Source: Macrostomum lignano (lineage: Eukaryota). Taken from it: DNA of 31,944 nucleotides. A program made the position numbers and the translations under genes. Of the stretch, positions 858 through 27,817 are shown one piece after another. Location of the stretch: positions 1-31,944 of the forward strand of contig NIVC01001926.1 of the NCBI GenBank assembly GCA_002269645.1, given 5' to 3'. Position 1 is the stretch's first letter. Every line of letters begins with the position of its first letter. Below the pieces are notes generated by a model that was not told where the DNA came from, made no database searches, and saw only the letters and a list, made by a program, of their open reading frames with translations.

Positions 858-3800
858 ATGAATCGCAATCAGCTGGCTCAGAAGCTGCGTCACAACTGGG
901 CAACAAGGGACCGAGCTCGACTCTAGGCCTCGTTTGGCGATGCTGACCTCACCAACCTTGGCTGGCTGCAGAACATGGATTTGATGAAGCTGACTCCGCC
1001 AACTCCGCCAGCGTCCCCGCCAGTTTCGCCGGGCCCGCTGCTGCTCATGCCGCCGCCGTTGCTGCAGTCGCAGCAGCTGTCCTCTCAAGTCAGTCCAGCG
1101 GCGGCACGCAGCAGAGGCCGCATCAGTTGGATCGAAGCGCTGCATTCTTGGCCGCCAGAGCTCTCTCAGTGCCGGCCAGCCACTCGGCGCCAACGGTGCC
1201 ATCCAGTTGCCGCCGTCGGCGCCGCCGCCCGTCCCGCCGTTGCCCGCTGCCGAGTTCGCGTCCGATCCCAGCCTGAAGCCGCCATACTCATTCTCGACTC
1301 TGATCTTCATGGCCCTGACCAGCCAGAGCCGCTCCCGCATGACTCTGCAGGAAATCTGCGGCTGGATAGGCGACAAATTCGCCTTTTATCGCTGCTCAGG
1401 AGACAAGAGCTGGCAGGTGAGAATAACTATAGGCTTGACTGCGCAATGTTTGTTTGATTCCTGTCCACCAGCCCATGACTTTGTCTGCGTCCGATCCAGC
1501 GCCAGTCCAAGGTCTTTGTTAGTCCTACCATCCTGTACAAGTCCATGTCTTTGCTAGTGCTACCATCCTGTACAAGTCCATGTCTTTGCTAGTGCTACCA
1601 TCCTGTACAAGTCCAGGTCTTTGCTTAGTGCTACCATCCTGTACAAGTCCATGTCTTTGCTAGTGCTACCATCCTGTACAAGTCCAGGTCTTTGCTTAGT
1701 GCTACCATCCTGTACAAGTCCAGGTCTTTGCTAGTGCTACCATCCTGTACAAGTCCATGTCTTTGCTTAGTGCTACTATTTTGTACAAGTCCAGGTCTTT
1801 GCTAGTGCTACCATCCTGTACAAGTCCAGGTCTTTGCTATAGTGCTACCATACTGTAGAAGTCCAGGTCTTTGCTAGTGCTACTATCCTCTACAAGTCTA
1901 AGTCTTTGTTAGTGCTCAGTGGCGCAGCCAGGATTTCCTTCGGGGGGGGGGGGTCACAGTCAGTCACAGGCTCACAGCGGCAACCGGGGGCAGGGGTGCT
2001 AGGCCTCTGCGACGGGGGAGGGGGCCTGAAAATTTGGCCTGGATCAGCCGGCTGGGGGAGGGTCATGGCTCCCATGACCCCCCGTTGGCTACGCCCCTGT
2101 TAGTGCTGTCATCCTGTAGAAGTCCAGAGCAACATTTTAGTCAATTTTATGGGGCTGGCCCTGTTGCATTTGCACGCCTGTCAGCTACTATACGAGTGCG
2201 AACTAAAAATACGATTGATCTCAATTCACGTGGCACTGGTTGCCCGTAACCCACCTCCATGACAGCCCCAGCTCCCCAGTTTCTGTGCAGTTCTTGGCAC
2301 AATAAAATATTTACGACCCGTGCGCAGACACTAAAAATTTTCTCCACAAAAAGAATGGCAGGCCCAGCGTGAATCTCTCGCCCTACACCAAAAAAACATC
2401 GCAGCTGAGAAGAGAGGTCACCCGCATTCCATATTGGGAGCTTGCTACTTGGGATTCTGTTAGGAAAAGCTGCATCCAAAAATTTTGTATCCCAAACATC
2501 GGTGCCCCCAGCGCGCAGGTCTCGGCTCTGTTTCCCGTCCTTCCCATTCCCAATTTTTTTCTTAACATTCACATCCCCGGCTCTCAGCTCCATTGTTCCC
2601 CGGCGCGTACACGACAGACAGACTCTTTGCATCGATCTCGCCGTGGGCCTTAATTCTCCCCTTCAGGACTGGGGATGAGTGAGGGGGCTTAGAAGCCAGA
2701 AGCAGGGGAAAGTGCAAAGTGCAACTGTACTTTAATTCTCTTAGCTAGTATCCTTTAGTCAACAGTCAGATGCCTAATTTTAGCATCACCATTGAGAGAC
2801 TCTGCTTTCCAAGAAAGACAATTATGGTTAGTTAGATTAGTCTTGTGCAAAATTGCGCTAAAAGTAGCTGTCAATAGGAGCTAAACTAGAGATGTTTCGA
2901 ACTGGCTACTACAAGTAACAAGCTACCAATTGAGTTCAAAGGTGGCTTCGCGAAAATCGTTGTTAAATATTAATAATTTGGATTTTCTTTGGGTCAGTTT
3001 CTACTGTTTTACCGACATGTAGTCATACAGAGTGCATGCTAGGGACGCCAGGGGTGCCAGGAGTGCCAGGGGTGCCAGGAGTGCCAGGGGTGCCAGGAGT
3101 GCCAGGGGTTCCAGGAGTGCCAGGGGTTCCAGGAGTGCCAAGGGCTGCCAGGAGTGCCAGGAGTGCCAGGAGTGCCAGGGGTGCCAGGAGTGCCAGGAGT
3201 GCCAGGGGTGCCAGGGGTGCTAGGGGTGCCAGGAGTGCCAGGAGTGCCAGGGGTGCCAGGGGTGAGGGGTGCCAGGAGTGCCAGGAGTGCCAGGGGTGCC
3301 AGGGGCGCAAGAGTTGTCAGAAATATCATGGATGTCAAAGATGTCTAGGGCGCCAAGGTTGCCACGGGCGCCAAGGTAGTCAGGGGCGCCAAGGTCACCA
3401 GAGGCGCCAAGGTCGTCAGGGGCGCCAAGGTCACCAGGGGCGCCAAGGTCGTCAGGGGCGCCAAGGTCACCAGGGGCGCCAAGGTCACCAGGGGCGCCAA
3501 GGTCGCCACAGCTGCATTTAGCATGGCATCTTTTCAGAGCGCGGTTCGCTACAACCTCACCCTAAACCGCTGCTTCCAACGGGTTCCGCGGCGCAAAGAC
3601 GAGGCCGGGAACAAGGGCGGCTTCTGGAGGCTCAATCCCGACCACGCCAGCTATTTGGAGATGCCGCATAGCAACCATCTGGCAACGGGGCCCGTCACCG
3701 CCCCTGTCACGTCGCTCGCCCAGACGGCGGGTTTCAAGCGACCAGGCGGGCCGCAGGCTGCCAGCGCCAGCAAGGAGATGGCGGCCACCGTGAAACGGCG

Positions 3801-4740
3801 TAACCATGGCAACCTGTTCTATGGCAGCCAGCAGGCGATGCACGCCACCTATCAGACGCAGCTCAGCCTGCCGGATTTCCAGGATGAGAGACGGAGTTTC
3901 TATGGTGACCACAACCACCTGCAGCATGGGCACCCGATGCCTGGATCTGATTGGCTGAGCGCAAACATCCTGGATGAGAACTCGATGCGGAGCCATGACC
4001 CGACTCTGTCGGGCGTCAGCTTGAAAAACGGTAGGCCATGAAGCAATCAGATTCGCTTGAGAGTAGCTCGAAAATTCGTTTTTTATTAGATTGCCAACTG
4101 CTTACAAGAAGTCTGCAACTGAGGATCTGAGAGGCTGGCTCAGAAACTGAGGATCTGGGAGGCTGGCCCAGCAGCTGGGGATCTGGGAGGCTGGCCCAGC
4201 AACTGAGGATCTGGGAGGTTGGCCCAGAAACTGAGAATCTGGGAGGGTGGGATCTTGGTGATCTGGGATCATGAGCATTAAACTTGCAGATATTTTACAA
4301 GAATAAATGCATGCTATCATCTGTAAACAAAATTTTTGCCAGCATCCGACCCCCGGCCAGCTGCAGCGACCGTTGGCTCCGTCTCGACGGCGTCGTCGTC
4401 TACAGCAGCAGCAGCCAGCACCACCGGTCCTGCCGACGATGAGCGCTGGCTGTTTGAACCGGACGACGGCTTGCTTGGCGAGAGCGGCCAGGCGGCTCTG
4501 GACATGTCCAACCCAGCCAGCCTGCTGGATTTGACTTTGCACGGCACAGCGCTGAATCCGCCGAGCTGGTGGGTCAGCAGCATCGGCGAGGTCGGCGGCG
4601 GAGGCGGTGGCGGCGCCGGTGGCAGTAGCGGCGGCGGCAGGGGCGCCACTCCGTCGCCGATTTTGCATAGTGAGCAGGAGGAATGGGTGGACGGCAATCT
4701 GGACGCTAGCGAGCTGGACACCCTGCTGGGTCTGGCCTAG
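858..4740 (+). CDS. foxJ1: FoxJ1-like forkhead transcription factor (spliced; proposed exons 858/927-1088, 1159-1416, 3538-4030, 4343-4740)
   Basis: Forkhead domain split by an intron: [14 protein letters not shown]...[21 protein letters not shown]|[32 protein letters not shown]. The wing resembles the FoxJ1 signature KVPR-KDEPGKGGFW. The N-terminal motif [15 protein letters not shown] resembles the FoxJ1 LTSLxWLQ motif. Splice sites are phase-matched: CAG|GTGAGA 1417, TTTTCAG|3538, G|GTAGGC 4031, TTTGCCAG|4343; stop TAG at 4738-4740. The 5' part is uncertain (TAG at 924-926; frame change near 1089-1158). Confidence 0.88.
1159..1416 (+). CDS. foxJ1: FoxJ1-like exon: Pro-rich linker and forkhead helices 1-2
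   Basis: Frame of ORF 1207..1557, reading KPPYS...SWQ; donor GTGAGA at 1417. The 5' boundary depends on a proposed 70-nt intron at 1089-1158. Confidence 0.85.
1505..1916. repeat. 35-36 bp minisatellite (GTCCATGTCTTTGCTAGTGCTACCATCCTGTACAA), about 11 copies, FoxJ1 intron
   Basis: Unit recurs at 1541, 1576 and onward. The last unit is interrupted by the MITE and resumes at 2100-2127. Confidence 0.95.
1917..2099. mobile_element. Non-autonomous hAT-type MITE, 183 bp
   Basis: Imperfect 14-bp TIRs: CAGTGGCGCAGCCA and TGGCTACGCCCCTG (reverse complement CAGGGGCGTAGCCA). Perfect 8-bp TSD TTAGTGCT at 1909-1916 and 2100-2107; 8-bp TSDs are typical of hAT. Confidence 0.85.
3041..3505. repeat. G-rich minisatellite: 9-bp GG(A/G)GTGCCA units grading into 18-bp GGGGCGCCAAGGTC(AC/GT)CA units
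   Basis: Directly visible. It lies in the FoxJ1 intron and ends about 30 nt before the 3538 acceptor. Confidence 0.93.
3538..4030 (+). CDS. foxJ1: FoxJ1-like exon: recognition helix, wing and downstream region
   Basis: Acceptor TTTTCAG ends at 3537 and is in phase 0 with the upstream donor. Reads [30 protein letters not shown]. Donor GTAGGC at 4031 (phase 1). Confidence 0.9.
4117..4255. repeat. 28-bp minisatellite (AACTGAGGATCTGGGAGGCTGGCCCAGC), about 5 copies
   Basis: Units start at 4117, 4145 and onward; inside FoxJ1 intron 4031-4342. Confidence 0.9.
4343..4740 (+). CDS. foxJ1: FoxJ1-like terminal exon (acidic/Trp-containing putative activation region)
   Basis: Acceptor TTTTTGCCAG ends at 4342; G+CA gives Ala in the frame of ORF 4336..4740. 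Ends [19 protein letters not shown]. Confidence 0.8.
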
Positions 4741-6131: not shown

Positions 6132-6369
6132 CTACTCAAAGGTTGTCGAGTCCACCTTGCGCGGCACAGCCGCCAGAGGGTCAGCCACGTTCATGATCAT
6201 GTGGTCAAACACGGCCACGGCGTAAGCTACTCCGGACGATGTGTCCGGGCCCACATGGACGGCCGACCAGCCGACTCGCTTGCTGGCGCAGTCTAGCAGC
6301 TGCATGTAGTGGAAGGCGCACTTCCTCTGCTCGTCGTCCTGCGAGGCAACCAGGAATTCGATTGGGGTC
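6132..6369 (-). CDS. Terminal exon of the CAP-like gene (missed by the ORF track)
   Basis: Polypyrimidine acceptor CTCTCTACCTGCAG. Reads TPIEFLVASQDDEQRKCAFHYMQLLDCASKRVGWSAVHVGPDTSSGVAYAVAVFDHMIMNVADPLAAVPRKVDSTTFE*. 238 nt = 1 + 79 codons. Confidence 0.8.
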
Positions 6370-7909
6370 CTGCAGGTAGAGAGTAGTGTGCGTACACTGT
6401 TTTAGGTTTTAAGTAGAATATAGAAATAAGGATATTAGACATACTGAATTATACATCGAGACAGATAAACTAGCGTTTAGGGATTTGCATAAAAAACTCA
6501 CTCAATTTGGTACCACATATTGACAGATTCCACAGGCAGCTGATCGAAGTCCTCGAACTCGATGCGGCTGGCCACCAGGCCGACAGTCTCGTCGCCGTCC
6601 TCTTCCTCGTCAAGGATTAGCATCGGCTGCTCGTATTCGTTGTCAAGCATCAACACAGCCGAGTAGCTCTGCAGTTCAGTCTGCAGCCTAGAGTTAAAGC
6701 CGTACTGAGCTTCGTAGTTGGCGAATCGCTGGGCGAGCCTCTGGGCTGCCATGCAATATTCGTCACGACAGGTGACCGGCTTGCAACCGACGTGGCACAG
6801 TCGGGCCCGGTTGATGCGGTGCACGGCTCGGGTCAGGCCAGATAGAGACTCTTCATCACACTGTAGCTGCCTCATCTGCTCAGCCCGGTTGTCCAGAACA
6901 GAGTTGAGCTGGCTCATCACGATGCGCTTTTTCTCGCTGTAGTTAAATCTGACGACAAGAGGAGCCTGCTGCACAGGGGAAACCGGAGTTGCTCCATCAC
7001 CATCTGGTCCGGCGATGGGGCGGCTTCGATTGCGTATTCTTCAGCCTCTTCTTCCTCATATTCGACAGCTTCCTCTTCCTCGTATTCTGCTTCTTCACCG
7101 TATTCAGCAGCTTCCTCTTCTCCGTATTCACCTTCTTCTTCTTCGTATTCACCTTCTTCTTCTCCGTATTCAGCAGCTTCCTCTTCTCCGTATTCACCTT
7201 CTTCTTCTTCGTATTCACCTTCTTCTTCTCCGTATTCAGCAGCTTCCTCTTCTCCATATTCAGCGGCTTCCTCTTCTCCATATTCAGCGGCTTCCTCTTC
7301 TCCATATTCAGCGGCTTCCTCTTCTCCATATTCAGCGGCTTCCTCTTCTCCATATTCAGCGGCTTCCTCTTCTCCGTATTCAGCGGCTTCCTCTTCTCCG
7401 TATTCAGCGGCTTCCTCTTCTCCGTATTCAGCGGCTTTCTCTTCTCCATATTCAGCGGCTTCCTCTTCCTCGTATTCAGCGGCTTCCTCCTCGGCTTCAG
7501 CTCCCTCTTCGTGGTATTCTTCATGGTATTCAACTACCTCTTCATGGTATTCCTCATGGTATTCTTCATGGTATTCAACAGCCTCTTCGTGGTATTCTTC
7601 ATGGTATTCAACTACCTCTTCATGGTATTCTTCATAGTATTCAACAACCTCTTCCTCGTTTTCAGCCTCCTCTTCGGCCCCCGCTTCCTCTTCTGCCTCG
7701 GCTGCATCATATTGGTAATCGTTGCGCCCAACAGCGTAGGCTTCGGTGGGATCGTCGGCCTCCTCATAGTATTGCTCGCCAGCCGCTCGTGGGACTTCGA
7801 CTTCGTCGGCATCGTCAAAGTTCTGACCTGCGACAGTTTTAGCCCTTGTTGAAGAAGATGCTTCGCTGCCACTGGCGGCGTTGCCTTTGTTCTTGTTGAC
7901 GATGACCAT
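6132..7909 (-). CDS. Acidic Glu/Tyr-repeat protein with a C-terminal divergent CAP/SCP/TAPS-like domain (about 540-550 aa)
   Basis: ORF 7909-6917 (acidic repeat) overlaps ORF 6974-6498. They are joined by a 32/35-nt GT-AG intron (7000-6969/6966) or by one extra C in the 7017-7020 run. A 132-nt intron follows (GA|GTGAGT at 6501 to CCTGCAG|G at 6370, phase 2), then exon 6369-6132. CAP-like motifs occur in the correct order: HRINRARLCHVGCKPV...AAQRLAQRF, ESVNMWY, FHYMQLLDCASKRVGWS, YAVAVFD. No signal peptide. Confidence 0.75.
7040..7700 (-). repeat. Coding minisatellite: 24-bp (YGEEEAAE), 21-bp (YEEEEGE) and YHEE-type units
   Basis: All unit lengths are multiples of 3 and the frame stays open throughout ORF 6917..7909. 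Confidence 0.9.
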
Positions 7910-9834
7910 GGTTATCTAATTACGCTCGTATCTTATCTTAGGGGAGAGGAGAGAGCAGTGAAAGTCCAAGTGTCAGCGCGGTGGATCGTAGGTGGGGCGG
8001 TCTGTCTGGTAAACGATTTTCTAACTGATAAAAAAGTCGGCTGTAAATCTTCTAAATATACTAAATCTCTTCTTATACTGTTTTAGAATGATAAAAAGAG
8101 CTATATAGGAATGGGGTTGTCTGTGGTGTGGTGAAAATGGAGGCGATGTGGGTGGCAGGGCGGTCTAAGCCAATTGGTTTGGGCTGACCAAAGTCGCAGG
8201 GTCGGTAAGCGCCAATCAGTGACGAGAAAAGTCGAGAGCGTAGGCCTAGGGGTGTGAAATGGTGGGCTAGTTGAGTTTTGCGCACAGCGGGGTGCAAACA
8301 ATTCTAGTGGGGGTAATCTAAACTTGCCAAACCAAGCGGCCAATCAGCGTAAAGCAGCCAGATGATAAACTAATTGAGACCTTTATCGGCGCGTTCTGCG
8401 TTGTAGTCCGATTGTGCGAAGTCCGAAGTTTAGTAAGTTTCATTTTTAATCAATAGTTTATTAGATGGAGTTAAATTAGATAATTTCATTAAATAAAATA
8501 ACTTCGTGTTTAAATTAGTTTATTTCAAGATGCAGTCAGATTGTGTTTTGAACGGAATCGATAGAAGTTTAAATAATTTAAAAAAATCGTACTACGCTTG
8601 ATTCAATTTCTCGTTTGCTACCCGTACTATTACTACTACAAGTACTGTCGAAATAGCAAATGTTGTTCAAAGTTTGCACATTTCAGAGTTTACGTTAGCA
8701 TGAAATTTCCAGGTTTGTAGAATAGTCGAAGAGGCCAAATCCTCTTTATTTAAGGAGCTATATTTTTTAATAATTAATTTAGCTCTATAAGGCAAGGCAG
8801 GAGCTATATTTTTAAAAAAGGGCCCCCTCTCCCCCACTGGCTACGTTCCCTGAAGTTGTCCTATTAAGATGATACACCAAATTTAGCCCTGCATTCCTGC
8901 AATTATCCTACTTTTAGCGTCCAAAAACGCTCTCCGTGATTAATAAATGTCCCAACTCGCTTCGTAAGCACTAGACACCGTGTTAGAATCCCAATGAACA
9001 AATTCCCTATGATTTGAGCCCTGACCATACTAATTTAAAACAATTTAATAATTTTAATTGTTTAAACAAAAAGATACGAAAGAGAAAAGCCGAAAAGCGA
9101 CCCCCCCCGTATACTGAACAGACCAGCACGACTTGACCCGCCCACCCTCCTCGCTGACAAGTGTCAGTTGCCGAAATCCATGCAGTGCACGAGTCCACCT
9201 GTCAAGCTGGATTCCCTTGTCTCCTATCTCCCCTATAGGGGATATAGCGGATTTAGTGCTGCCGCGATGGCGGTACAAGCGTATAGTCATATTCCTGAAA
9301 TACCTTGTTAGCTTTAGTCGAGTTTCCTCTCCTTGCATGTGCTGCGCCGGCTCGTCGGGTCCCCCCCCCTGAGGTGGGAGTGCTGCAGGCTACTGGAAGG
9401 TGGGGCTGTCGAACCCGCCAGATTCCCCAAATCGATAAGCTCGGTGATTAATTGACCCGGATACACTTTTCCGCCAGGTTATCATCGGGCTGCTGCCATT
9501 TTTTCTTTCTTTCTTTCGATTGCAATTTTACTGTCGGTACGGCCGCAGAGGAAGTTCTACATAGCAAGTTGCGGTCTGCTTCATCTTCAGTTCACCTTCT
9601 CGGTCGGTTCCAACGCGTGACTTTTCAGTCAAAACGGCATTTTTCTCAACTTGCAATTAAATTTTTGAGAAGAAATTTGAGGCACACCCCGGCTCTCATT
9701 AATTTGGAGGGACGAAAACATTGCTGTTTTCTGCGTTTTCTGCTTTTTGAAGATGTTTTCTAGGAATGAAAAACTGCAACAAAAGTTTTATTTCCATGAA
9801 CTCTGAGAGTTTTCTTTCAGATTACTTTCCTTAC

Positions 9835-10348
<514 letters not shown>

Positions 10349-10989
10349 TTCTTTCGTTCTCGCTCTCTCTCGCTGTCTCTCTCTTTGTCATCCTGTAAGA
10401 CTGTTTATCTGTTTTTGCCAAGTATCTACCGGTACAGTCGTCGATGCAATTTTTAGAAAGAATTAGACGTTATGAAGAACGCTACCTTGTCAAGTTTTTA
10501 TTTTTGAGCTGTGATGCGCAAAATTCAACAGAAATATAATTAGTGTACATAGCTCAGTATGCAACTTCAAACATATTCAATACAGACGCAGTTAAGTTGA
10601 ACAGAGATTTATCAATCAGAAAATTGTTGGCCTGCCATGCAACGCAGCGCTGCTTTTTGATGCAGACACCCTCCAACAGACAATAACTGGGTTGCTAGCT
10701 TGTGCTTAAATCAAAGCAGACCCTGACTTCTTGCGCTGCTGGTCGAAGTAGGAGTTCATGCGAACGTATAGGGTAAAGGAAAAGCAAAAAGTTATTGAGA
10801 TGACAGTCTGAGCGAGCCAGAAACGCTACCTACTGAGCATTTTAGCTGTCACAATTTGCTTTGGACACTAGGGATGGCATGGTTGGCTTTGAGACGTGTT
10901 GGTTGCTAGTAAGGTGAGGTGATTAATGAGGCTTGAGAAGCGCTTGAGGGTTTGAGAAGGCAAGCCGAGTGAAGCAAAATCTTTTTGTG

Positions 10990-12202: not shown

Positions 12203-15200
12203 CTGTATTGACAGCGATTTAATGGTCTTTTGTAACTTTGCATGACTCATATAGATGTCTGAGTTCATAACAATTGGGTTACGTGGTGTAGTTAAAATCC
12301 CTGCACCCACAGGCTATTCCCTCATCCATGATAGGGCTATTAGATTAGCGATCCATTGCATTCATTCATCCATAGATTAGAAATCCATTCTATTCCGTCA
12401 GCCGCAATCTACATGTACATACGAGCTACTAGTAGCGTTCAACCCAGAGCAGTGGCTACTCACCCATGATGCCTCCTAGGTCGGAGAACAGATTCACCAG
12501 CTCGTAGCTGCGCTCCTCAAACAGCTGCCGCACGGTAAGGGTTTTCGGATAAACCCGCAGCTGCAGGAAGCTCTGCTTGATGATGTTATGCACCTGGACA
12601 CAGTGCTCGTCATCTTCGAACAGGTCTGACTTCCTGTCCAGCTCCGTGTCCAGACAGCGACTCAGGTTCACTCTGTGATGCGTGATAGAAAAGTTGAGCG
12701 CATGCTCGGTGCTGGCATAATTGTCCAGCTTCCTCTGCATCATCTTGTTGATTTCGTCAACTCGCGACTTGAGCATGCCGGCTATGCGGGCCAAGCGGAT
12801 TCGGGCGCCGCGAATTTGGAAATTGTGATCCGGCCAGCGGCTCTGGAACACCGAGAAGTCGTAGGTGGTGTAGTTGCAGATATTCAGGCAACTGGACTGC
12901 TTGCGGCCGGACTTCAAATAAGGCATGGCGCATTTCAGGCGATTCAGACGGCGTTGAATCTCCGGGAATCGGTCGGCCAGTAGCTGAGCGGCGTCGAATC
13001 TGTCTGGCAGGTGCAGCCGGTCGAAGATGTCGGTGCGCATCCTGCCGGTGCTGCGGTCCAGCAGGCTGTAGTTGGCGATGCTTGGGTCAGTTTCAAAGAA
13101 CTTGCGGATTCGCTGCAGCAGGCTGAGCAGGTCTGGCTTGTTCTGAGCGCCAAGGAGGTCGTGGCAGTATTCCAGCTGCGGCTGACCATCTGGCTCGGAC
13201 TTAACGAGGCCTTCGACCGTGCATTTACAGTTGTCCCGAATCAGCTTCAGGTACTCGAATGTGGTGCAGTCAGCTAGCTGGTTTTCGTAGCTGGTGACGC
13301 TTCTGAAATTGGGATTGGTGTATTGATTTTGAGCAGGCTTTTGAGCAATTTTTGCACCGACTATTGAGCAACATTGTGAGCTAGGACTACTCAAGTAGAA
13401 GGACGGGAAACTACAATACGTTTCTGAGAAAATTTTAGGAGGCTGGTTTTACCGAAGAAATACACTACGGAGATACAAGCGCAGGTTTTCATTTTTCAGC
13501 AAAAAATTGCTATTGTTTTTGATAGGAGGCAGATCCAATGTTCATCTTTTGATGTGTCTTGCCTCTCTTATATCTCTATTGATATTTATAAAGCTTTTCG
13601 TTTAGAAAACTAGGATTCTATGTTAATTTTATATCCTACGTGCAATCGTACATGTACTTTCTCTGAATATCATAGAAATGGCACAGCTCGACTCATTGGT
13701 TTTAGGAATCAATTTTTTCATTCTTAGCTTATTGACTGTGTAACAATAATCTTCTATCACTCACACACGCTCACACAGGGTGTACAGCGGTCCTGACTTT
13801 CTAATCGGCAGACATGTACACTCTCTGTGCCCTCATGGGCGTGAATCGCACGAAAACCTTCCGGCCAACTTCGCGCACGGAATCGAACCAGGGGTCGTTT
13901 TGGAAGAGTCAAATGCATTTACCGCTGAGCTGCTCTGCGCCTCCCCCCATTGGTAGCGATGAACTTGTTGGGGATTCGAGCACGGGCTTTTCGTGCAACT
14001 AACGTCCATTAGTTCCAAAAGCCTTAGCACAGAGGAGAGTGTACAACTGCCTGACGAAGAGAAAATCAAGGACCACTATTCACCCTGTGTGCGTGATCAG
14101 GGTCAGCAAAATGGGGTATAACTACTCGTCAGAACTGGGCATAAAGATCTTTCAAATTTGGCGCAACGCACGCCAATTCTAAACACTCTCTCGGCCCAAA
14201 AATTTCGCTACTCAGTATTTGAATTCGATTGCAATGCGGCCGCAGTCAGAGCCCAACCTGCTGAGTTAGTTGGCTAAGGTCCGCTGCACTTGCCCTCAAG
14301 GCCGCTCAAGAGGTTGTGGCTAAGAGTGTGGGGGAAAATATGGATTGCAAGTCGCTCCGCCGTCTGTTTGCACCCTCCAGTTGAGAGCGGCCAGCCCACT
14401 CCAAGTGTTATTTAAGTGTGTTATTCTGCTCAACGCACGAGCAGGCGCAGCTCATCCCACGAGCTGTGCCGTATTTGGGCAGCCCCAGTTCATTGCTGCG
14501 GACTTTCACGCCGATGAACAAGCCTCTCGTCTGACAACCTCGGCTGCCCCGGTTGATAGAGAAAGCCTGTTTCGAGTCTTCTTCTATAATACTGCATTTT
14601 TGTCTCAGCAAGAGGAGTCAGGGACTGTGAGATGCAGAGAACAGTTTGAGTCGAATATGAGTGAGAAAATCCTATCTAAGCCAATCAGATGGGAAGTGAA
14701 GCTACGTTGGTTTGGGGAGTGAAGTCACACCGAGTGAAGTCACATCGATTTGGAAGTAGGCGACATTCGACCTATCTGAAAGGTCACATATCAGTCCGGG
14801 GCTCACATATCAGTCGAGGGGGGCATTCACAATGCCACTTACCCCAGCAGGTGGTCGAAGGCGTGGAATCGGCCCTTCGGCTCGCACCGTTTCGTGGGCG
14901 TGTTGGCCAGGCTGGTCTGCACCTGGTTGAGTGCCAGCACCGTCTGCATGCCGCTGGGAGAGTTGATGCCGTACTCGCTTGGGTAGGGGATCGTGTCCTG
15001 CGGGTTGGCGCAGCTTCAGCTGAATGATGGAGCATGGGGTTCAGTCTGAATTGAAACAAATTGGGGATTGTTAAGCTAATCTAGCCAACAGATAGATAAA
15101 GAAAGATAATGGATTGCTAATCTATAGCCATCGCAGATGAAGGAATAGAATGGATTGCTAATCTATAGCTCCATCAGGGATGAAGGAATAGAATGAATTG

Positions 15201-18200
15201 CTAATCTATAGCTCCATCAGGGATGAAGGAATAGAATGGATTGCTAATCTATAACCATCAGGGATGAAGGAATAGAATGGATTGCTAATCTATAGCCATC
15301 ACGGATGAAGGAATAGAATGGATTGCTAATCTATAGCCATCACGGATGAAGGAATAGAATGGATTGCTAATCTATAGCCATCGCAGATGAAGGAATAGAA
15401 TGGATTGCTAATCTATAGCTCCATCAGGGATGAAGGAATAGAATGAATTGCTAATCTATAGCTCCATCAGGGATGAAGGAATAGAATGGATTGCTAATCT
15501 ATAGCCATCACGGATGAAGGAATAGAATGGATTGCTAATCTATAGCCATCACGGATGAAGGAATAGAATGGATTGCTAATCTATAGCCATCACGGATGAA
15601 GGAATAGAATGGATTGCTAATCTATAGCCATCACGGATGAAGGAATAGAATGGATTGCTAATCTATAGCCATCAGGGTTGAAGGAATAGAATGGATTGCC
15701 AATCTATAGCCATCAGGGTTGAAGGAATAGAATGGATTGCTAATCTATAGCCATCACGGATGAAGGAATAGAATGGATTGCTAATCTATAGCCATCACGG
15801 ATGAAGGAATAGAATGGATTGTTAATCTATAGCTCCATCAGGGATGAAGGAATAGAATGGATTGCTAATCTATAGCTCCATCAGGGATGAAGGAATAGAA
15901 TGGATTGCTAATCTATAGCTCCATCAGGGATGAAGGAATAGAATGGATTGCTAATCTATAGCCATCACGGATGAAGGAATAGAATGGATTGCTAATCTAT
16001 AGCCATCACGGATGAAGGAATAGAATGGATTGCTAATCTATAGCCATCAGGGTTGAAGGAATAGAATGGATTGCTAATCTATAGCCATCACAGATGAAGG
16101 AATAGAATGGATTGCTAATCTATAGCCATCACGGATGAAGGAATAGAATGGATTGCTAATCTATAGCCATCACGGATGAAGGAATAGAATGGATTGCTAA
16201 TCTATAGCCATCAGGGTTGAAGGAATAGAATGGATTGCTAATCTATAGCCATCACAGATGAAGGAATAGAATGGATTGCTAATCTATAGCCATCACGGAT
16301 GAAGGAATAGAATGGATTGCTAATCTATAGCCATCACGGATGAAGGAATAGAATGGATTGCTAATCTATAGCCATCACGGATGAAGGAATAGAATGGATT
16401 GCTAATCTATAGCCATCAGGGTTGAAGGAATAGAATGGATTGCTAATCTATAACCATCAGGGTTGAAGGAATAGAATGGATTGCTAATCTATAGCCATCA
16501 GGGTTGAAGGAATAGAATGGATTGCTAATCTATAGCCATCAGGGTTGAAGGAATAGAATGGATTGCTAATCTATAGCCATCACGGATGAAGGAATAGAAT
16601 GGATTGCTAATCTATAGCCATCACAGATGAAGGAATAGAATGGATTGCTAATCTATAACCATCAGGGATGAAGGAATAGAATGGATTGCTAATCTATAGT
16701 CATCAGGGATGAAGGAATAGAATGGATTGCTAATCTATAGCCATAAATGAATGCATTTTGGAAATATTTCAGTCTAAATTCTACGCTAGAAAGTGTTTAT
16801 GATTTTGAACGATTAAGCCACGATCGGTCAGCTCTAATATTTCAGCGGCACACTCTGCTTGTCACTCATTCGCTTCACTCCCTGCAGCTGCCGCAGCCTG
16901 TCAGTTTTTTGCAGTACGCGATTTTACAAAGTGATTTCTTGTGCAACAATTTATTCATTTTTGTAGTTCGGCCAACCTGCAGCTGCTTGACCCCCCGCCG
17001 TTCCGGAGGATGGGGTGGGGCTGTAGGTTTGCGCCGCAGCCTTTCACTTTGTCCGGTTTTGGGGTGGTCGGCTACGCCAGCCAGCTGGAATTCCCCAAGC
17101 ACTGCTGTGAGGGTGTCTTCAGTCCTGGGTGCCACCTCAGCATCAAATGTTCTCCCACCCCGTACCCCAGACAGGGTCTTGTTCCCCCCCCCCCAACATC
17201 CACCAACCACCCCAATCTGTGCTGGTGCGTCTCCCACTCTCTGTCTAATCTCTCTCTCCTGCCTCTACGAGCTAGTATGACATTTCGATGTGTTTACAGG
17301 AACACAATGCCATCAGAAAGTTTGGCCCTCCCGGACCGAGGGCACTTGTTTAGATGTTGCCTCTGCGCAGAGCGGAGCGGCATGCAGGCGGAGAGAGCTT
17401 CAAGGGCAGAGTCGGGAACAGAACTGGGAGATATTGACGGAAGCGGAGACCCGGTGTGGTTAGAGGGTGTGCGATTTTTTCCCTATCCGCCCGGTGCTGC
17501 AGTCGCAGGAAGTGGAAAACAGGTGGGGGCGGTGGTCTCTGCCGCTTCCGCGAATTACACCTGGCCCCTGCCAGGTCCTCGCGCCGCTGCTGCCAAACTC
17601 AAGGGCTGCCAGCACAGCCTACGGCCTGATACAGGGGATGCGGCCTGCAGCCACTCGCTGAGCTCACATTCTCCCTGCTTTCTGCTCATCCGGATGCTGC
17701 CTTGATGCCCTTCATCTGCGGGCTGCCCTTGCCACATCTTCCTTTCTCACCTAGCTGTGTCTATTTTTGCCGCCTCATGTCTGTCTTAGTGTCAGTCAGT
17801 CAGTCAGTCAGTCAGTCAGTCAGTCAGTCAGTCAGTCAGTCAGTCAGTCAGTCAGTCAGTCAGTCAGTCAGTCAGTCAGTCAGTCAGTCAGTCAGTCAGT
17901 CAGTCAGTCAGTCAGTCAGTCAGTCAGTCAGTCAGTCAGTCAGTCAGTCAGTCAGTCAGTCAGTTAGTCAGTCAGTCAGTCAGTCAGTCAGTCAGTCAGT
18001 CAGTCAGTCAGTCAGTCAGTCAGTCAGTCAGTCAGTTAGTCAGTCAGTCAGTCAGTCAGTCAGTTAGTCAGTCAGTCAGTCAGTCAGTCAGTCAGTCAGT
18101 CAGTCAGTCAGTCAGTCAGTCAGTCAGTCAGTTAGTCAGTCAGTCAGTCAGTCAGTCAGTCAGTCAGTCAGTCAGTCAGTCAGTCAGTTAGTCAGTCAGT

Positions 18201-21200
18201 CAGTCAGTCAGTCAGTCAGTCAGTCAGTTAGTCAGTCAGTCAGTCAGTCAGTCAGTCAGTCAGTCAGTCAGTCAGTCAGTCAGTCAGTCAGTCAGTCAGT
18301 CAGTCAGTCAGTCAGTCATTCAGTCAGTCAGTCAGTCAGTCAGTCAGTCAGTCAGTCAGTCAGTCAGTCAGTCAGTCAGTCAGTCAGTCAGTCAGTCAGT
18401 CAGTCAGTCAGTCAGTCAGTCAGTCAGTCAGTCAGTCAGTCAGTCAGTCATTCAGTCAGTCAGTCAGTCAGTCAGTCAGTCAGTCAGTCAGTCAGTCAGT
18501 CAGTCAGTCAGTCAGTCAGTCAGTTAGTCACTTTAGCTGGGTTGAGGGCTTGAAAGCTTTCCTGCAACAGTGTCTGTCAGGATATCAAATTACTCAGGCA
18601 CTTCTAGGCACCAGACAAACATAATTCATTAGTAGTTTAAAGTATTTTGTATCCGTGATGCCCCTGCAGTCTCTCTGTTCTCCTTTTCTCACCCCAGCTC
18701 CCTCTCAGAACAGTTGGCCCAACCAAACGGACAAGAGAAGCCAGAAGCCGAGAAGACAGAGACGCGGCAGAGAAAAAGTGAGGGAGCTGAGGAGGAGCTG
18801 CAGAGGGACAGCCCCGCGGGCGGCCCCCTTGGGATCGGCTTCTGGTCCCCTTCGGCATCGCAACCAGATGCCGCCTGCGAAGCACGATTAGGACCGGCAT
18901 GGCCGCATGATTAATCCTGAGCTGGGCTGAGGGCAGAAGGCCAGTTAAACAGAGCCAGTCGAGTTTCTTTTAGTTGAGGAGACCGGGGACGGCTCCGCGG
19001 GCTGCACTGTTGAATTGGCTGTAAATCAAGCTGGATCTCGGCTACTGCAGGCAGGGTCTCATGTGCTCGGTCGCGCCCCGCTGCATGGGTTGCCATCATG
19101 CTTGACCTGTTCGCTTTTTTACATCGGTCGCTTAAAGTCCTTCGGTTGTTCTCGGGTTCAAAATATTAAGTGTGCTTTTCTACTTATTGCTACCCCGGAT
19201 TCGTACGGTCCTGAGGGGTGACGAGTCGCTCCGAGCGGGTAACGCATCTGGCTCACTCCAAAGTTCTCGGGATCGGTTTCGTGCGCAGTCGCTATTGACC
19301 TGCGACTTGGAGGGTCAACCGCCCAGGTGTACATTACTGACGATGAGAATAGTCGGGTTCGCTGTGCGGAATATGCTGGCTGCGGATCGACTGTCTTTGG
19401 AAGTTGCGGCAGCCCTCTCTACAGCAAAGTCACAATCGATGTTTGCGGGCAGTAAAAGAGTCGCTAATGATTGATGGCCAAGCGATGACTCACTGTGTTG
19501 ACTCGTGAAATGATGCAGCAACCATGGACCGAGCATAGCTATTGAAGCACTTGATTTTTGTGACCTTAACTGATCCCAGAGTGAAAAATTTGGTGTTAGA
19601 AAATGTTCCAACACAGCAATGCAAAACACAGGGACCGTACAAAGCTACAGGAGTCGGAGCACTTCCCTATTGATGTTGACACAGCAATATACTAGTACTT
19701 AACTGTGCCTCGGAGCAAGAAGGCAGATCTATTCGAACCTGAGCAGAGTAAAGCTTATCCCGCGACCTGCTTTTTTGAAAGAAGCTGCAGTCTGTGTGTT
19801 ACAACCACAAGAAGAGACTAGACAATGGTGCGAAAACACAGTAGGAATCATCTGAGGTGCAGACAAAATATGCAACAAAAAGTGATTAACCACTAAACAC
19901 AACCTATAACACAGTATGTTCGTTGTCACTTGTCCCTACATTCCCCAACTGTCTATGGCCACTTGTACCTACATTCACCAACTGTCTATGGCCACTTGTA
20001 CCTACATTCACCAACTGTCTATGGCCACTTGTACCTACATTCACCAACTGTCTATGGCCACTTGTACCTAAATTCACCAACTGTCTATGGCCATCAAAGG
20101 TCTTATCAAGGATGATTTGAGTAAACAAAACGTATAAAAGCCAAATTGTTCCTACTTCTATGAAACTGTCCAAACACTGCCCAGCCTCTCTTGCATCGGC
20201 CTCTCGAACTCCAAAAATGCCGACAAAAGTCTCGCCTCCGTGCCGAGAAATAATAAATGAAGACCGAGGGACGAGCGCTCGGACCTCAACCTGACACCAT
20301 GGGCTGGTCGCTCCATAGTAGAGAGTAGATCGCTGGGGAAGACACATTTAAGGGATTGATTTTTTTTGTGCCGAAACCCCAGCTGTTTTTCCTCTCTTTC
20401 TCTCCCCCCCTCTCTCTCTCTCTCTCCATTTCCTTCATGCTGCTTTCACTGCCCCCCTTCCCAATCTTCTTCTGGCCGCCGATTTCAAGTTAGTTTCTGT
20501 TGCTTTAGCAATATTCTGATCCTGCTTCTGGCTCGGCTGAGTTCCGTACCCCCAATCCTCACATTGAGGGCTCAGCAGATAGCTTATAGTGTTGCAGAGA
20601 TTGGTTGCTGGCCTTAAATCCGTTCTACTTACTTTAATCTATTTTTGCTTATCGTCCAGCGGAATTCTCTAGAATTTTCCTTCAACCAAACACAACGATT
20701 TCAGTAAAGAGATTTGCTGCACTTGCTGAAATTGCTTACCTGTTTGGGGAAGCTGGTTCAGACTGAACTGTCTTGGGCACATGTAGGCCCATTTATATAC
20801 TTCACTCTACTCTACTCTACTCTTCTCTACTCTACTCTACTCTACTCTACTCTACTCTACTCTACTCTACTCTACTCTACTCTACTCTACTCTACTCTAC
20901 TCTACTCTGCTCTACTCTACTCTACTCTTCTCTACTCTACTCTACTCTACTCTACTCTACTCTACTCTACTCTACTCTACTCTACTCTACTCTACTCTAC
21001 TCTACTCTACTCTACTCTACTCTACTCTACTCTACTCTACTCTACTCTACTCTACTCTACTCTACTCTACTCTACTCTACTCTACTCTACTCTACTCTAC
21101 TCTACTCTACTCTACTCTACTCTACTCTACTCTACTCTACTCTACTCTACTCTACTCTACTCTACTCTACTCTACTCTACTCTACTCTACTCTACTCTAC

Positions 21201-27069: not shown

Positions 27070-27817
27070 CTGCTGTCTATGAAACTCGTGCTGTCTATGA
27101 AACTCGTGCTGTCTATGAAACACTTTCTGTCAATTGAAATCGTGCTGTCTATGGAACTCGTGCTGTCTATGGAACTCGTGCTGTCTATGGAACTCGTGCT
27201 GTCAATGGAACTCGTGCTGTCTATGGAACTCGTGCAGTCTATGGAACTCTGCTGTCTATGAAACTCGTGCTGTCTATGGAACTCGTGCTGTCAATGGAAC
27301 TCGTGCTGTCTATGGAACTCGTGCAGTCTATGGAACTCTGCTGTCTATGAAACTCGTGCTGTCTATGAAACACTTTCTGTCAATTGAAATCGTGCTGTCT
27401 ATGGAACTCGTGCTGTCTATGGAACTCGTGCTGTCAATGGAACTCGCGCTGTCTATGGACCTCGTGCAGTCTATGGAACTCGTGCTGTCTATGGAACTCT
27501 GCTGTCTATGAAACTCGTGCAGTCTATGGAACTCGCGCTGTCTATGGAACTCGTGCTGTCTATGGAACTCGTGCTGTCAATGGAACTCGTGCTGTCTATG
27601 AAACTCGTGCTGTCTATGGAACTCGTGCTGTCAATGGAACTCGTGCTGTCTATGGAACTCGTGCTGTCAATGGAACTCGTGCTGTCTATGGAACTCGCGC
27701 TGTCTATGGAACTCGCGCTGTCTATGGAACTCGCGCTCTCTCGCGCTCTCTAGAACTTGCGCTGTCTATGGAACTCGCGCTCTCTCGCGCTCTCTAGAAC
27801 TCGCGCTCTCTATAGAA
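27070..27817. repeat. 18-bp minisatellite (GCTGTCTATGGAACTCGT) containing a 250-bp higher-order duplication
   Basis: Period 18. The variant block CACTTTCTGTCAATTGAAAT recurs at 27121 and 27371. Confidence 0.95.

What the first reader, a model, noticed from the sequence alone, without database searches (positions are those of the whole stretch)
6132..7909. Hidden gene: polyanionic Glu/Tyr repeat fused to a divergent, non-secreted CAP/SCP-like domain
No single ORF shows this protein; it appears only after joining two overlapping frames and a spliced exon. The C-terminal part follows CAP topology: INRARLCH-GCKPV...AAQRLAQRF resembles HNxYRxxH-GxxPL...SAQxWAxxL; SVNMWY resembles AVxxWY; FHYMQLL...KRVGW resembles GHFTQVVW...xxLGC; YAVAVFD resembles FVVxxY. 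The first conserved His of the HN motif is replaced by Ile, the GEN motif is not clear, and there is no signal peptide, as in GAPR-1-like group 2 SCP/TAPS proteins. About 240 residues of E/Y/H-rich repeat precede the domain. I do not recognise this architecture.
Basis: partly seen in the sequence, partly recalled or inferred. Interest (0 to 1): 0.7.

Follow-up and report, generated by a model that had tools for sequence, protein, structure and literature searches.

The report
Acidic-repeat protein with divergent CAP domain
This is a real flatworm (Macrostomum lignano) gene for a non-secreted protein that joins a very acidic Glu/Tyr repeat to a highly diverged CAP/SCP domain; it is an unusual variant of a well-known family, public databases already hold it under a wrong name, and it is not a new kind of system.

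Summary
On the minus strand, an ATG at 7909 opens a 330-codon frame carrying about 235 residues of Glu/Tyr tandem repeat. A second frame continues to 6502, a canonical 132-nt intron (6501-6370) follows, and a last exon ends at TAG 6132. The window is Macrostomum lignano. Two UniRef gene models are 100% identical over the C-terminal 234 residues, so the gene is not hidden, but they are fragmentary and named "OTU domain-containing protein".

The CAP reading is supported at family level. The window's own domain scores just below Pfam's CAP threshold (18.4-19.5 bits against 21.1) but matches end to end. Its only relative among 1.84 billion proteins, P0003, has an acidic repeat and two copies of the domain. 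Both copies pass the threshold, and the family consensus scores 31.7 bits. No OTU signal was found. All four CAP signature motifs and most of the metal-binding tetrad are lost. There is no signal peptide.

Fold prediction was inconclusive (pLDDT 45). The frame change sits at a CCCC run (7017-7020) and is more likely a 1-nt indel than a 32-nt intron. Function is inferred only. Interest is modest.

The parts
7907..7909 (-). Start codon in an ACCATGG context; an in-frame TAG lies 9 nt upstream
7724..7909 (-). Non-repetitive N-terminal coding part (residues 1-62), with no signal-peptide-like hydrophobic segment
   Evidence: maximum Kyte-Doolittle hydropathy over 10 residues within the first 30 residues is -0.25
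7022..7723 (-). Polyanionic Glu/Tyr(/Ala/Gly/His) tandem-repeat region, residues 63-296. It has EEVVEYHEEYH-type 33-nt units followed by EEEAAEYG 24-nt units.
7017..7020 (-). CCCC run where the reading frame changes relative to UniRef models P0001 and P0002 (AAP|IAGPDG...). Probably a 1-nt homopolymer length difference, either an assembly error or a frameshifted copy.
   Evidence: sequence
6969..7000 (-). Alternative way to restore the frame: a 32-nt GT...AG segment (GTGATG...TGTGCAG). Judged the less likely explanation.
   Evidence: the same segment is read as coding (GDGATPVSPVQ) in P0001 and P0002
6502..6968 (-). Second-frame coding segment: linker plus the N-terminal two thirds of the CAP-like domain. 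Ends with phase-2 donor GA|GTGAGT.
6370..6501 (-). Canonical spliceosomal intron, 132 nt, GTGAGT...CTGCAG
   Evidence: the junction sequence is identical to P0001 and P0002, and homologue P0003 crosses it without a gap
6132..6369 (-). Last exon: C-terminal third of the CAP-like domain (FHYMQLL...VGWSA...YAVAVFD), a tail, and stop TAG at 6134-6132
6502..6818 (-). CAP-like domain, first part. The Pfam PF00188 match starts at residue 51 of the 234-aa C-terminal part.
6222..6369 (-). CAP-like domain, second part. The Pfam match ends at residue 205 of the C-terminal part.

Best explanation
A protein-coding gene of the flatworm Macrostomum lignano runs on the minus strand from ATG 7909 to TAG 6132.

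It encodes a cytosolic protein of about 540 aa with pI about 4 and net charge about -140. The protein has three parts:
- a short N-terminus;
- about 235 residues of in-frame Glu/Tyr minisatellite (EEVVEYHEEYH and EEEAAEYG units, Glu:Tyr about 3.7:1);

The domain keeps the CAP core positions: xNxxR..H, P-[LV], A...A, G, SVxxW, H[YF]xQLL, S..[VI]GW and YAVA[VL]F. It has lost all four signature motifs, the disulphide cysteines and three of the four His/Glu/Glu/His metal-site residues.

Shown:
- gene structure;
- repeat composition, and the frame in which the repeat codes;
- family-level homology to CAP;
- absence of a signal peptide and of transmembrane segments;
- existence of one relative with the same layout (acidic 8-residue repeat followed by CAP-like domains) in an RNA-seq assembly.

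Inferred:
- The CAP-like domain acts as a metal-independent binding module for a lipid, sterol or partner protein, as in other tetrad-less CAP proteins.
- The polyanionic tail is an intrinsically disordered electrostatic module that binds cations or basic proteins.
- Its roughly 30 Tyr residues in acidic E-Y-G/H/E-E-E contexts are plausible acceptors for multi-site tyrosine phosphorylation.

In this window copy the two halves are out of frame by one base at a CCCC run. This is most likely an assembly error or a copy-specific frameshift. One true intron (6501-6370) interrupts the domain.
For: - Organism and existing models: (100% identity to M. lignano UniRef A0A1I8GH23 and A0A1I8IDX6).
- Structure of the gene.
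- Repeat. One search gives 11 synonymous to 3 non-synonymous differences in the Glu/Tyr frame, against 1 to 13 in the other frames.
- CAP homology of the window domain: 18.4-19.5 bits, E 0.002-0.004, profile positions 3-112 of 117.
- CAP homology of the relative: P0003 matches the window domain at E 2.3e-13 in 1.84 billion proteins, with BLASTP 5e-11 and 2e-8 to its two copies.
- P0003 against CAP: 44.6 bits, E 3e-11; its copies score 25.9 and 25.8 bits; the family consensus scores 31.7 bits, E 3e-7.
- Controls: no CAP hit in 8 reversed or shuffled sequences.
- PDB: the only sequence hit of the family profile is CAP protein P14a, aligned at the WY and HYxQ motifs.
- Invariant columns among the three domain copies fall on CAP core positions.
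- The AF2 secondary-structure order (helix, short strand, helix, helix, strands, helix, strand, strand) is compatible with CAP.
- No signal peptide or transmembrane segment: maximum hydropathy over 19 residues is 1.34.
- P0003 is a single uninterrupted ORF on a transcript-like contig. It has an acidic AEEDACAD repeat upstream of two domains and also lacks a signal peptide.
Against: - The window domain alone is below Pfam's gathering score. One of eight shuffled controls reached a comparable E (0.006), although to a different family and over only part of the profile.
- The fold is not confirmed: AF2 pLDDT 31 and 45, pTM 0.49. Foldseek found nothing at E <= 0.001. CAP structures appear only at ranks 11, 29 and 31 with E > 1.
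- Strict CAP1-CAP4 patterns are absent.
- phmmer and hmmsearch against PDB sequences found nothing significant.
- No expression data for this locus could be reached.
- In this copy the frames are discontinuous. As assembled, it would yield only a 330-aa acidic protein without the domain.
- All functional statements are inference.
Confidence: 0.78

Rival explanations
1. The C-terminal domain is an OTU-type (ovarian tumour) cysteine-protease or deubiquitinase-like domain, as the UniRef names of the two identical M. lignano models say.
For: UniRef names A0A1I8GH23 and A0A1I8IDX6 'OTU domain-containing protein'. An Asp/Glu-rich start and an H-Y motif about 137 residues apart loosely recall OTU spacing. 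That resemblance is my own reading and was not tested.
Against: - No Pfam OTU-family hit at E <= 10 for the window domain, P0001, P0003, its two copies or the consensus.
- No OTU chain among the PDB sequence hits at E <= 10.
- No D-G-x-C catalytic cysteine motif in any copy.
- CAP is the family hit repeatedly and above threshold.
Confidence: 0.03
2. The domain is not homologous to CAP. It is a lineage-restricted domain of unknown fold, and the weak CAP matches are convergent or chance.
For: - The window domain is sub-threshold.
- All four signature motifs are missing.
- Structure prediction and Foldseek are uninformative.
- Only one relative exists in 1.84 billion proteins.
Against: - Three independent domain copies each hit the same Pfam family end to end, two of them above the curated cut-off. 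The consensus scores higher than any single member (31.7 bits), as expected for true homology.
- Controls are negative for CAP.
- The sole PDB hit is a CAP protein aligned at the expected motifs.
Confidence: 0.12
3. This particular genomic copy is a recently frameshifted allele or paralogue, with a real 1-nt deletion in the C run. It yields only a 330-aa polyanionic protein. Intact copies elsewhere in the polyploid genome make the full fusion protein.
For: - The frame switch maps to CCCC at 7017-7020, while two other models read straight through.
- The M. lignano genome is a hidden polyploid with many near-identical copies (PMC10468722 abstract).
- The Mlig_3_7 assembly was Pilon-polished with Illumina and RNA-seq data (PMC5730564), so residual homopolymer errors should be rarer if the window comes from that assembly.
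Against: - The downstream domain is 100% identical in protein to P0001 over 234 residues, so there is no sign of decay.
- PacBio-based assemblies typically undercall homopolymers, and the older models themselves contain frame-hopping artefacts (P0002).
- No reads were available to decide.
Confidence: 0.25
4. The two frames are joined in vivo by splicing of a 32-nt intron (7000-6969, GT...AG), as joining the overlapping frames implies.
For: A GT...AG pair with a pyrimidine-rich 3' end (TTTCCCCTGTGCAG) restores the frame exactly.
Against: - The same 32 nt are read as coding and in frame in both UniRef models. Splicing them there would break the frame, because 32 is not a multiple of 3.
- The donor GTGATG is weak.
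- At 32 nt it is far below the one confirmed intron here (132 nt) and the reported mean of 1.1-1.4 kb. It leaves very little room for a branch point.
Confidence: 0.12

Closest known systems
Group 2 (intracellular) SCP/TAPS or venom-allergen-like proteins of flatworms and human GAPR-1/GLIPR2
   Same: - CAP-type domain with no signal peptide and without the six disulphide cysteines. These features define group 2 in PMC3435950.
- Flatworm group 2 members include double-domain proteins (SmVAL11 orthologues) and one with a long non-CAP extension (SmVAL6). This parallels the two-domain relative P0003 and the repeat extension here.
   Different: - Group 2 VALs match PF00188 clearly and are well conserved across flatworms. 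This family barely reaches the profile and has only one detectable relative.
- The domain is acidic (pI 4.8), whereas GAPR-1 is basic and N-myristoylated (from my own knowledge).
- The extension is N-terminal and polyanionic, not C-terminal.
- Phylogenetic placement was not tested.
CAP proteins that lack the prototypical motifs or tetrad (Schistosoma mansoni SmVAL4; Heligmosomoides polygyrus HpVAL-4)
   Same: They keep the CAP fold while lacking CAP signature motifs or the central-cavity tetrad, and they act as lipid or sterol binders (titles and abstracts of PMC4118828 and PMC5893428). This is the best precedent for a metal-independent binding role.
   Different: Those are secreted group 1 proteins with signal peptides and disulphides. 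Neither has an acidic repeat. Lipid binding by the present domain is untested.
P0003 (683-aa ORF on RNA-seq contig SRR30276804_61058; organism not identified)
   Same: - It is the only true relative: 29-32% identity, E 2.3e-13.
- It has the same layout: no signal peptide, an acidic 8-residue (24-nt) tandem repeat, then the CAP-like domain.
   Different: - It has two domain copies instead of one.
- Its repeat unit is AEEDACAD (Cys-containing, no Tyr), about 6 copies instead of about 25.
- The N-terminal regions are not significantly similar.
Polyanionic Glu-rich disordered regions and synthetic poly(Glu4,Tyr)
   Same: - The Glu:Tyr ratio of 3.7:1 and the dominant context AAEYGEE resemble poly(Glu,Tyr) 4:1. 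That polymer is the generic tyrosine-kinase substrate. The contexts also resemble acidic Y-G-E kinase optima and the EEY-ending alpha-tubulin tails. These comparisons come from my own knowledge and are a lead only.
- Glu-rich disordered tails in general bind cations and basic proteins (PMC5424795, listed).
   Different: There is no evidence here of phosphorylation, cation binding or partner binding. This is compositional similarity, not homology.

Membership tests
CAP/SCP/TAPS superfamily (Pfam PF00188) | The window's own sequence reaches the curated Pfam gathering score (21.1 bits) over the whole domain | tested here: not met
   18.4 bits (E 0.0041) for the 234-aa C-terminal part. 19.5 bits (E 0.0018) with the acidic insert removed. 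Coverage is full, profile positions 3-112 of 117.
CAP/SCP/TAPS superfamily (Pfam PF00188) | The family to which the window domain belongs (relatives and consensus) reaches the gathering score | tested here: met
   P0003 scores 44.6 bits, E 3e-11. Its copies score 25.9 and 25.8 bits, and the consensus scores 31.7 bits, E 3e-7, over profile positions 2-114 of 117. The link from window to P0003 is E 2.3e-13. Controls are negative.
CAP/SCP/TAPS superfamily (Pfam PF00188) | Alpha-beta-alpha sandwich fold | tested here: inconclusive
   AF2 gave pLDDT 31.4 from the single sequence and 45.4 (pTM 0.49) from a 3-sequence alignment. Foldseek against PDB gave no match at E <= 0.001; GLIPR1, stecrisp and MpPR-1i appear at ranks 11, 29 and 31 with E 1.9-5.3. 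The order of secondary-structure elements is compatible.
CAP/SCP/TAPS superfamily (Pfam PF00188) | Signature motifs CAP1 (PS01009), CAP2 (PS01010), CAP3 (HNxxR) and CAP4 (G[EQ]N[ILV]); patterns recalled from the literature | tested here: not met
   A regex search found none of the four in the window domain or in either P0003 copy. Only relaxed cores remain: HYMQLL, HFIQLL, INRAR, VNELR.
CAP/SCP/TAPS superfamily (Pfam PF00188) | His/Glu/Glu/His tetrad of the central cavity (divalent-cation site) | tested here: not met
   - Only the last His (FHYMQ) aligns with His93 of P14a. The Glu74 position is Ile in the window (alignment).
- There is no GEN motif.
- No His lies between the xNxxR..H helix and FHY in the window domain (sequence).
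Group 2 (GAPR-1-like, intracellular) CAP proteins | No signal peptide | tested here: met
   Hydropathy only: maximum over 10 residues in the first 30 residues is -0.25, and maximum over 19 residues anywhere is 1.34. An in-frame stop lies 9 nt upstream of the ATG. P0003 likewise lacks a signal peptide. No SignalP-type predictor was available.
Group 2 (GAPR-1-like, intracellular) CAP proteins | Absence of the six conserved disulphide cysteines of group 1 | tested here: met
   The Cys of the ..LGC.. motif is Trp (VGW) in all three copies. The CAP2 Cys is absent. Only one Cys column is invariant in the family. Mapping of the remaining positions is approximate.
Group 2 (GAPR-1-like, intracellular) CAP proteins | Phylogenetic clustering with known group 2 members, and the conserved His-Tyr pair described for SmVAL13 | not tested
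   No reference CAP sequences could be obtained. The divergence is probably too great for a reliable tree.
OTU deubiquitinase family (name given by UniRef) | Match to an OTU profile and presence of the catalytic Cys (D-G-x-C) and His | tested here: not met
   No OTU family at E <= 10 in Pfam for any sequence of the family. No D[GA]xC motif. No OTU chain in the PDB sequence searches. The PROSITE profile that probably generated the name could not be run.

The most novel reading that the evidence does not exclude
The gene defines a previously unrecognised intracellular CAP subfamily, possibly restricted to macrostomorph flatworms. In it a motif-less, tetrad-less CAP domain is always tethered to an 8-residue-period polyanionic repeat. 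In M. lignano the repeat has evolved into a natural poly(Glu4,Tyr) tract. That tract would be heavily tyrosine-phosphorylated, or would mimic acidic EEY tubulin tails. It would act as a kinase or SH2 sponge, or as a cation or basic-protein reservoir, with the CAP domain localising it.
Probability: 0.12. Interest if true: 0.55.

Novelty: new variant of a known kind. Interest (0 to 1): 0.3.

Why it matters
- It corrects a database label: 'OTU domain-containing protein' should read 'divergent CAP/SCP-domain protein'.
- It adds an extreme case to the little-studied intracellular (group 2-like) CAP proteins. This one has lost every signature motif and the metal site, yet is still detectable as CAP through a single intermediate sequence.
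- The fusion to a tract of about 235 residues at Glu:Tyr about 4:1 is unusual. M. lignano has RNAi, in situ hybridisation and transgenesis, so the gene could serve as a handle on what motif-less cytosolic CAP domains do.
- It is also an example of how homopolymer indels and in-frame minisatellites fragment gene models in this repeat-rich polyploid genome.
- It does not open a long-standing question, and its function remains inferred.

Tried and rejected
- Single-sequence AF2 gave pLDDT 31. A 3-sequence alignment gave pLDDT 45. Foldseek against PDB on the latter found no significant match. The fold therefore stays undecided.
- phmmer or hmmsearch against PDB sequences was run with the window domain, P0003 copy 2 and profiles A1 and A2. 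Nothing was significant; only P14a appeared at E 1.7.
- The word-indexed homologue search was run with alignments A1 and A2. No new relatives were found, and P0003 was not recovered.
- A metagenome scan with A2 gave 170 pattern matches, none confirmed.
- Exact-protein look-ups of the 330-aa ORF, P0001 and P0002 found nothing on record. No transcript evidence for this locus was therefore obtained.
- The sample SRR30276804 was not found in the literature, so the organism of P0003 is unknown.
- The N-terminal regions of the window protein and P0003 are not significantly similar.
- P0004 (E 4e-5 over six 38-residue repeats) was set aside as a repeat-amplified chance match to residues 38-75.
- The OTU reading was rejected; see the rival explanations.
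- Rfam found no RNA family in the window.
- Literature searches for Macrostomum CAP or acidic-repeat proteins found only the general platyhelminth VAL review.
Full report
**What is there**

The window is eukaryotic and repeat-rich, with GC content from 33 to 64% per kb. The finding lies on the minus strand.
- An ATG at 7909 sits in an ACCATGG context, with an in-frame TAG 9 nt upstream. It opens a 330-codon ORF, 7909..6917.
- A second frame is open from about 7020 to a TGA at 6500-6498.
- A consensus donor GTGAGT starts at 6501. An acceptor ...CTGCAG ends at 6370.
- The next exon runs in frame to TAG at 6134-6132.
- Joined, the pieces give 1614 nt, or 537 aa.

**Organism and existing annotation**

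The C-terminal 234 residues are 100% identical to two Macrostomum lignano UniRef entries. These are A0A1I8GH23 (P0001, 388 aa) and A0A1I8IDX6 (P0002, 367 aa).

Both entries are fragments that start inside the repeat. P0002 even contains KRKPLNTE segments, which are another frame of the same repeat. Both are named 'OTU domain-containing protein'. The gene is thus not hidden, but it is incompletely modelled and, as shown below, mis-named. The junction WYQIE|TPIEF in these models is exactly the 6502/6369 splice.

**The frame join**

tblastn of P0001 against the window places the frame change between 7019 and 7016. That is inside the CCCC run at 7020-7017.

The models read AAP-IAGPDGDGATPVSPVQQAPLVV, which needs one more base than the window has. 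The alternative is a 32-nt GT...AG segment (7000-6969), which also restores the frame. Several points count against it:
- That segment is coding and in frame in both other models.
- Its donor is weak.
- It is four times shorter than the one confirmed intron here, and far below the reported mean intron length of 1.1-1.4 kb.

My estimates for three overlapping readings, which are not meant to sum to one:
- about 0.65 that the true gene is continuous, and the window has either an uncorrected homopolymer error or a copy-specific deletion;
- about 0.25 that this copy is really frameshifted;
- about 0.12 that the 32-nt intron is real.

No reads could be consulted.

**The repeat**

Tandem Repeats Finder finds a 24-nt unit x17 at 7092-7489 (92% matches) and 33/45-nt units at 7496-7654.

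Residues 63-296 contain 119 Glu, 32 Tyr, 40 Ala, 20 Gly and 8 His, and carry a net charge of -119. The most frequent Tyr context is AAEYGEE, seen 12 times.

Repeats without stop codons are open in all frames here, and the window holds at least 14 other arrays. ORF length alone therefore proves nothing. The following observations support translation in the Glu/Tyr frame:
- Both periods are multiples of three.
- The array is flanked by non-repetitive sequence in the same frame.
- Differences among 13 units from their consensus are 11 synonymous to 3 non-synonymous in the Glu/Tyr frame, against 1 to 13 in each other sense frame.

Because units share ancestry, there are only about six independent variant types. 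This is therefore supportive rather than conclusive.

**The C-terminal domain**

Pfam gives CAP (PF00188) as the top hit of the window domain. The match is E 0.0041 at 18.4 bits, against a cut-off of 21.1, and spans profile positions 3-112 of 117.

An exhaustive phmmer search of 1.84 billion representatives found a single relative, P0003, at E 2.3e-13. P0003 has these properties:
- It is a 683-aa uninterrupted ORF on a transcript-like contig from RNA-seq run SRR30276804. An Illumina adapter sits at the 3' end.
- It has no signal peptide.
- It has six AEEDACAD repeats.
- It has two copies of the domain.

The CAP scores are as follows.

| Sequence | Bits | E-value |
|---|---|---|
| Window C-terminal part, 234 aa | 18.4 | 0.0041 |
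| Window domain, acidic insert removed | 19.5 | 0.0018 |
| P0003, whole protein | 44.6 | 3e-11 |
| P0003 copy 1 | 25.9 | 2e-5 |
| P0003 copy 2 | 25.8 | 2.1e-5 |
| Consensus of the three copies | 31.7 | 3e-7 |

The consensus match covers profile positions 2-114 of 117.

Eight reversed or shuffled controls never hit CAP. One reached E 0.006 to an unrelated family over part of its profile. This shows that the window's own score would not be enough without the family evidence.

The only PDB sequence matched by the family profile is tomato PR-1 P14a, the archetypal CAP protein. It aligns SVxxWY with AVQLWV, and AHFIQLLD..S..VGW with RHYTQVVW..S..LGC, at a non-significant E of 1.7.

The columns invariant across the three copies are R, R..H, P, C, A...A, E, G, G....R, SV..W, QL.D..S...GW.A and YAVA.F. 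They fall on positions that form the CAP core.

I conclude that the domain is a true but extreme CAP relative, with probability about 0.85.

**What it has lost**

- None of the four signature motifs is present in any copy.
- Of the His/Glu/Glu/His tetrad, only the last His is retained, in the window and in P0003 copy 1. It is Gln in copy 2.
- The P14a Glu74 position is Ile.
- There is no GEN motif.
- No His lies in the 115 residues where the first tetrad His should be.
- The cysteines of the LGC and CAP2 motifs are replaced (VGW, YAVAVF).
- The domain is acidic, with pI 4.8.

**Fold**

AF2 gave pLDDT 31 without an alignment and 45 (pTM 0.49) with three sequences.

The order of predicted elements suits a CAP sandwich. 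It is a helix over AVHRINRARL, a short strand at KPVT, a long helix over DEYCMAAQRLAQRF, further strands, a helix over CAFHYMQLL, then strands at VGWSAV and VAYAVAVFD.

Foldseek found nothing significant. Three CAP structures appear at ranks 11, 29 and 31 with E > 1.

**OTU**

No OTU-type Pfam family appears at E <= 10 for any family member. There is no catalytic-Cys motif and no OTU chain in the PDB searches. The UniRef name cannot be reproduced, and I regard it as an automatic-annotation artefact.

**How it probably works (inference)**

The protein has no signal peptide or transmembrane segment, so it should be cytosolic or nuclear.

CAP domains without the tetrad are documented as lipid or sterol binders, for example SmVAL4 and HpVAL-4. 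Intracellular group 2 members are thought to organise protein and lipid interactions. The likeliest role of the domain is therefore a metal-independent binding module.

The tail has about 120 negative charges and should be disordered. It could bind cations or basic proteins. Its Tyr residues in E-Y-G/H/E-E-E contexts, at a Glu:Tyr ratio of 3.7:1, resemble the generic kinase substrate poly(Glu4,Tyr). That comparison comes from my own knowledge and makes multi-site tyrosine phosphorylation a testable idea.

The relative P0003 shares the layout but not the Tyr. This suggests that the conserved property is the acidic 8-residue-period tract, and that Tyr is a lineage-specific addition.

**Assessment**

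- It is a new variant of a known kind.
- Interest is modest, at 0.3.

Noticed in passing
window 1207-1557 and 3523-4041 (+): Two exons of a Forkhead-box transcription factor gene (Pfam Forkhead 54 and 38 bits). They are separated by an intron of about 2 kb that carries 9/18-nt GCCAGGGGT-type arrays (3047-3508). These arrays translate as fake GVPGVP and collagen-like ORFs.
   Followed up: partly
window 25557-26450 and 12456-13394 (-): An amiloride-sensitive sodium channel (ASC/ENaC/degenerin) gene. ASC profile positions 1-236 score 97 bits and positions 350-439 score 36 bits. The gene spans more than 13 kb, with repeat-filled introns. It lies upstream of the CAP-like gene on the same strand.
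   Followed up: partly
window, e.g. 9842-10352, 15108-16744, 17791-18530, 20804-21282, 22026-22482, 27071-27741: At least 14 strong tandem arrays in 32 kb (TCTG x128, a 41-nt unit x40, GTCA x185, ACTCT x96, and others). They generate 100-290-aa open frames on both strands that are not genes.
   Followed up: partly
UniRef A0A1I8GH23 and A0A1I8IDX6 (P0001, P0002): Both public models of this gene are N-terminally truncated and named 'OTU domain-containing protein', and no Pfam OTU signal could be found. P0002 also contains KRKPLNTEKRKPLNTE, the +1 frame of the Glu/Tyr repeat, and a deviant C-terminus. These are frame-hopping artefacts of an indel-rich assembly.
   Followed up: yes
window 8101-8107 and 7937-7953 (-): A TATATAG box lies about 195 nt upstream of the ATG. 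A pyrimidine tract ending in AG (ctctcctctcccctaAG, AG at 7938-7937) lies 28 nt upstream of the ATG. The latter could be a cis-splice or spliced-leader trans-splice acceptor. No canonical AATAAA was seen within about 330 nt downstream of the stop.
   Followed up: no
L001 355-500 (P0003 residues about 115-165): The only relative also carries a 24-nt (8-residue) acidic tandem repeat upstream of its CAP-like domains. Its unit is AEEDACAD, Cys-containing and Tyr-free. The period is the same as the EEEAAEYG unit here, but homology of the two arrays could not be shown.
   Followed up: partly
P0004 (658 aa): A protein with six 38-residue repeats (…LGLKIIVHSMRRGEECHVTIAPW…) matched window-domain residues 38-75 at E 4e-5. 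This is probably a chance similarity amplified by repetition. Its source is unknown.
   Followed up: no
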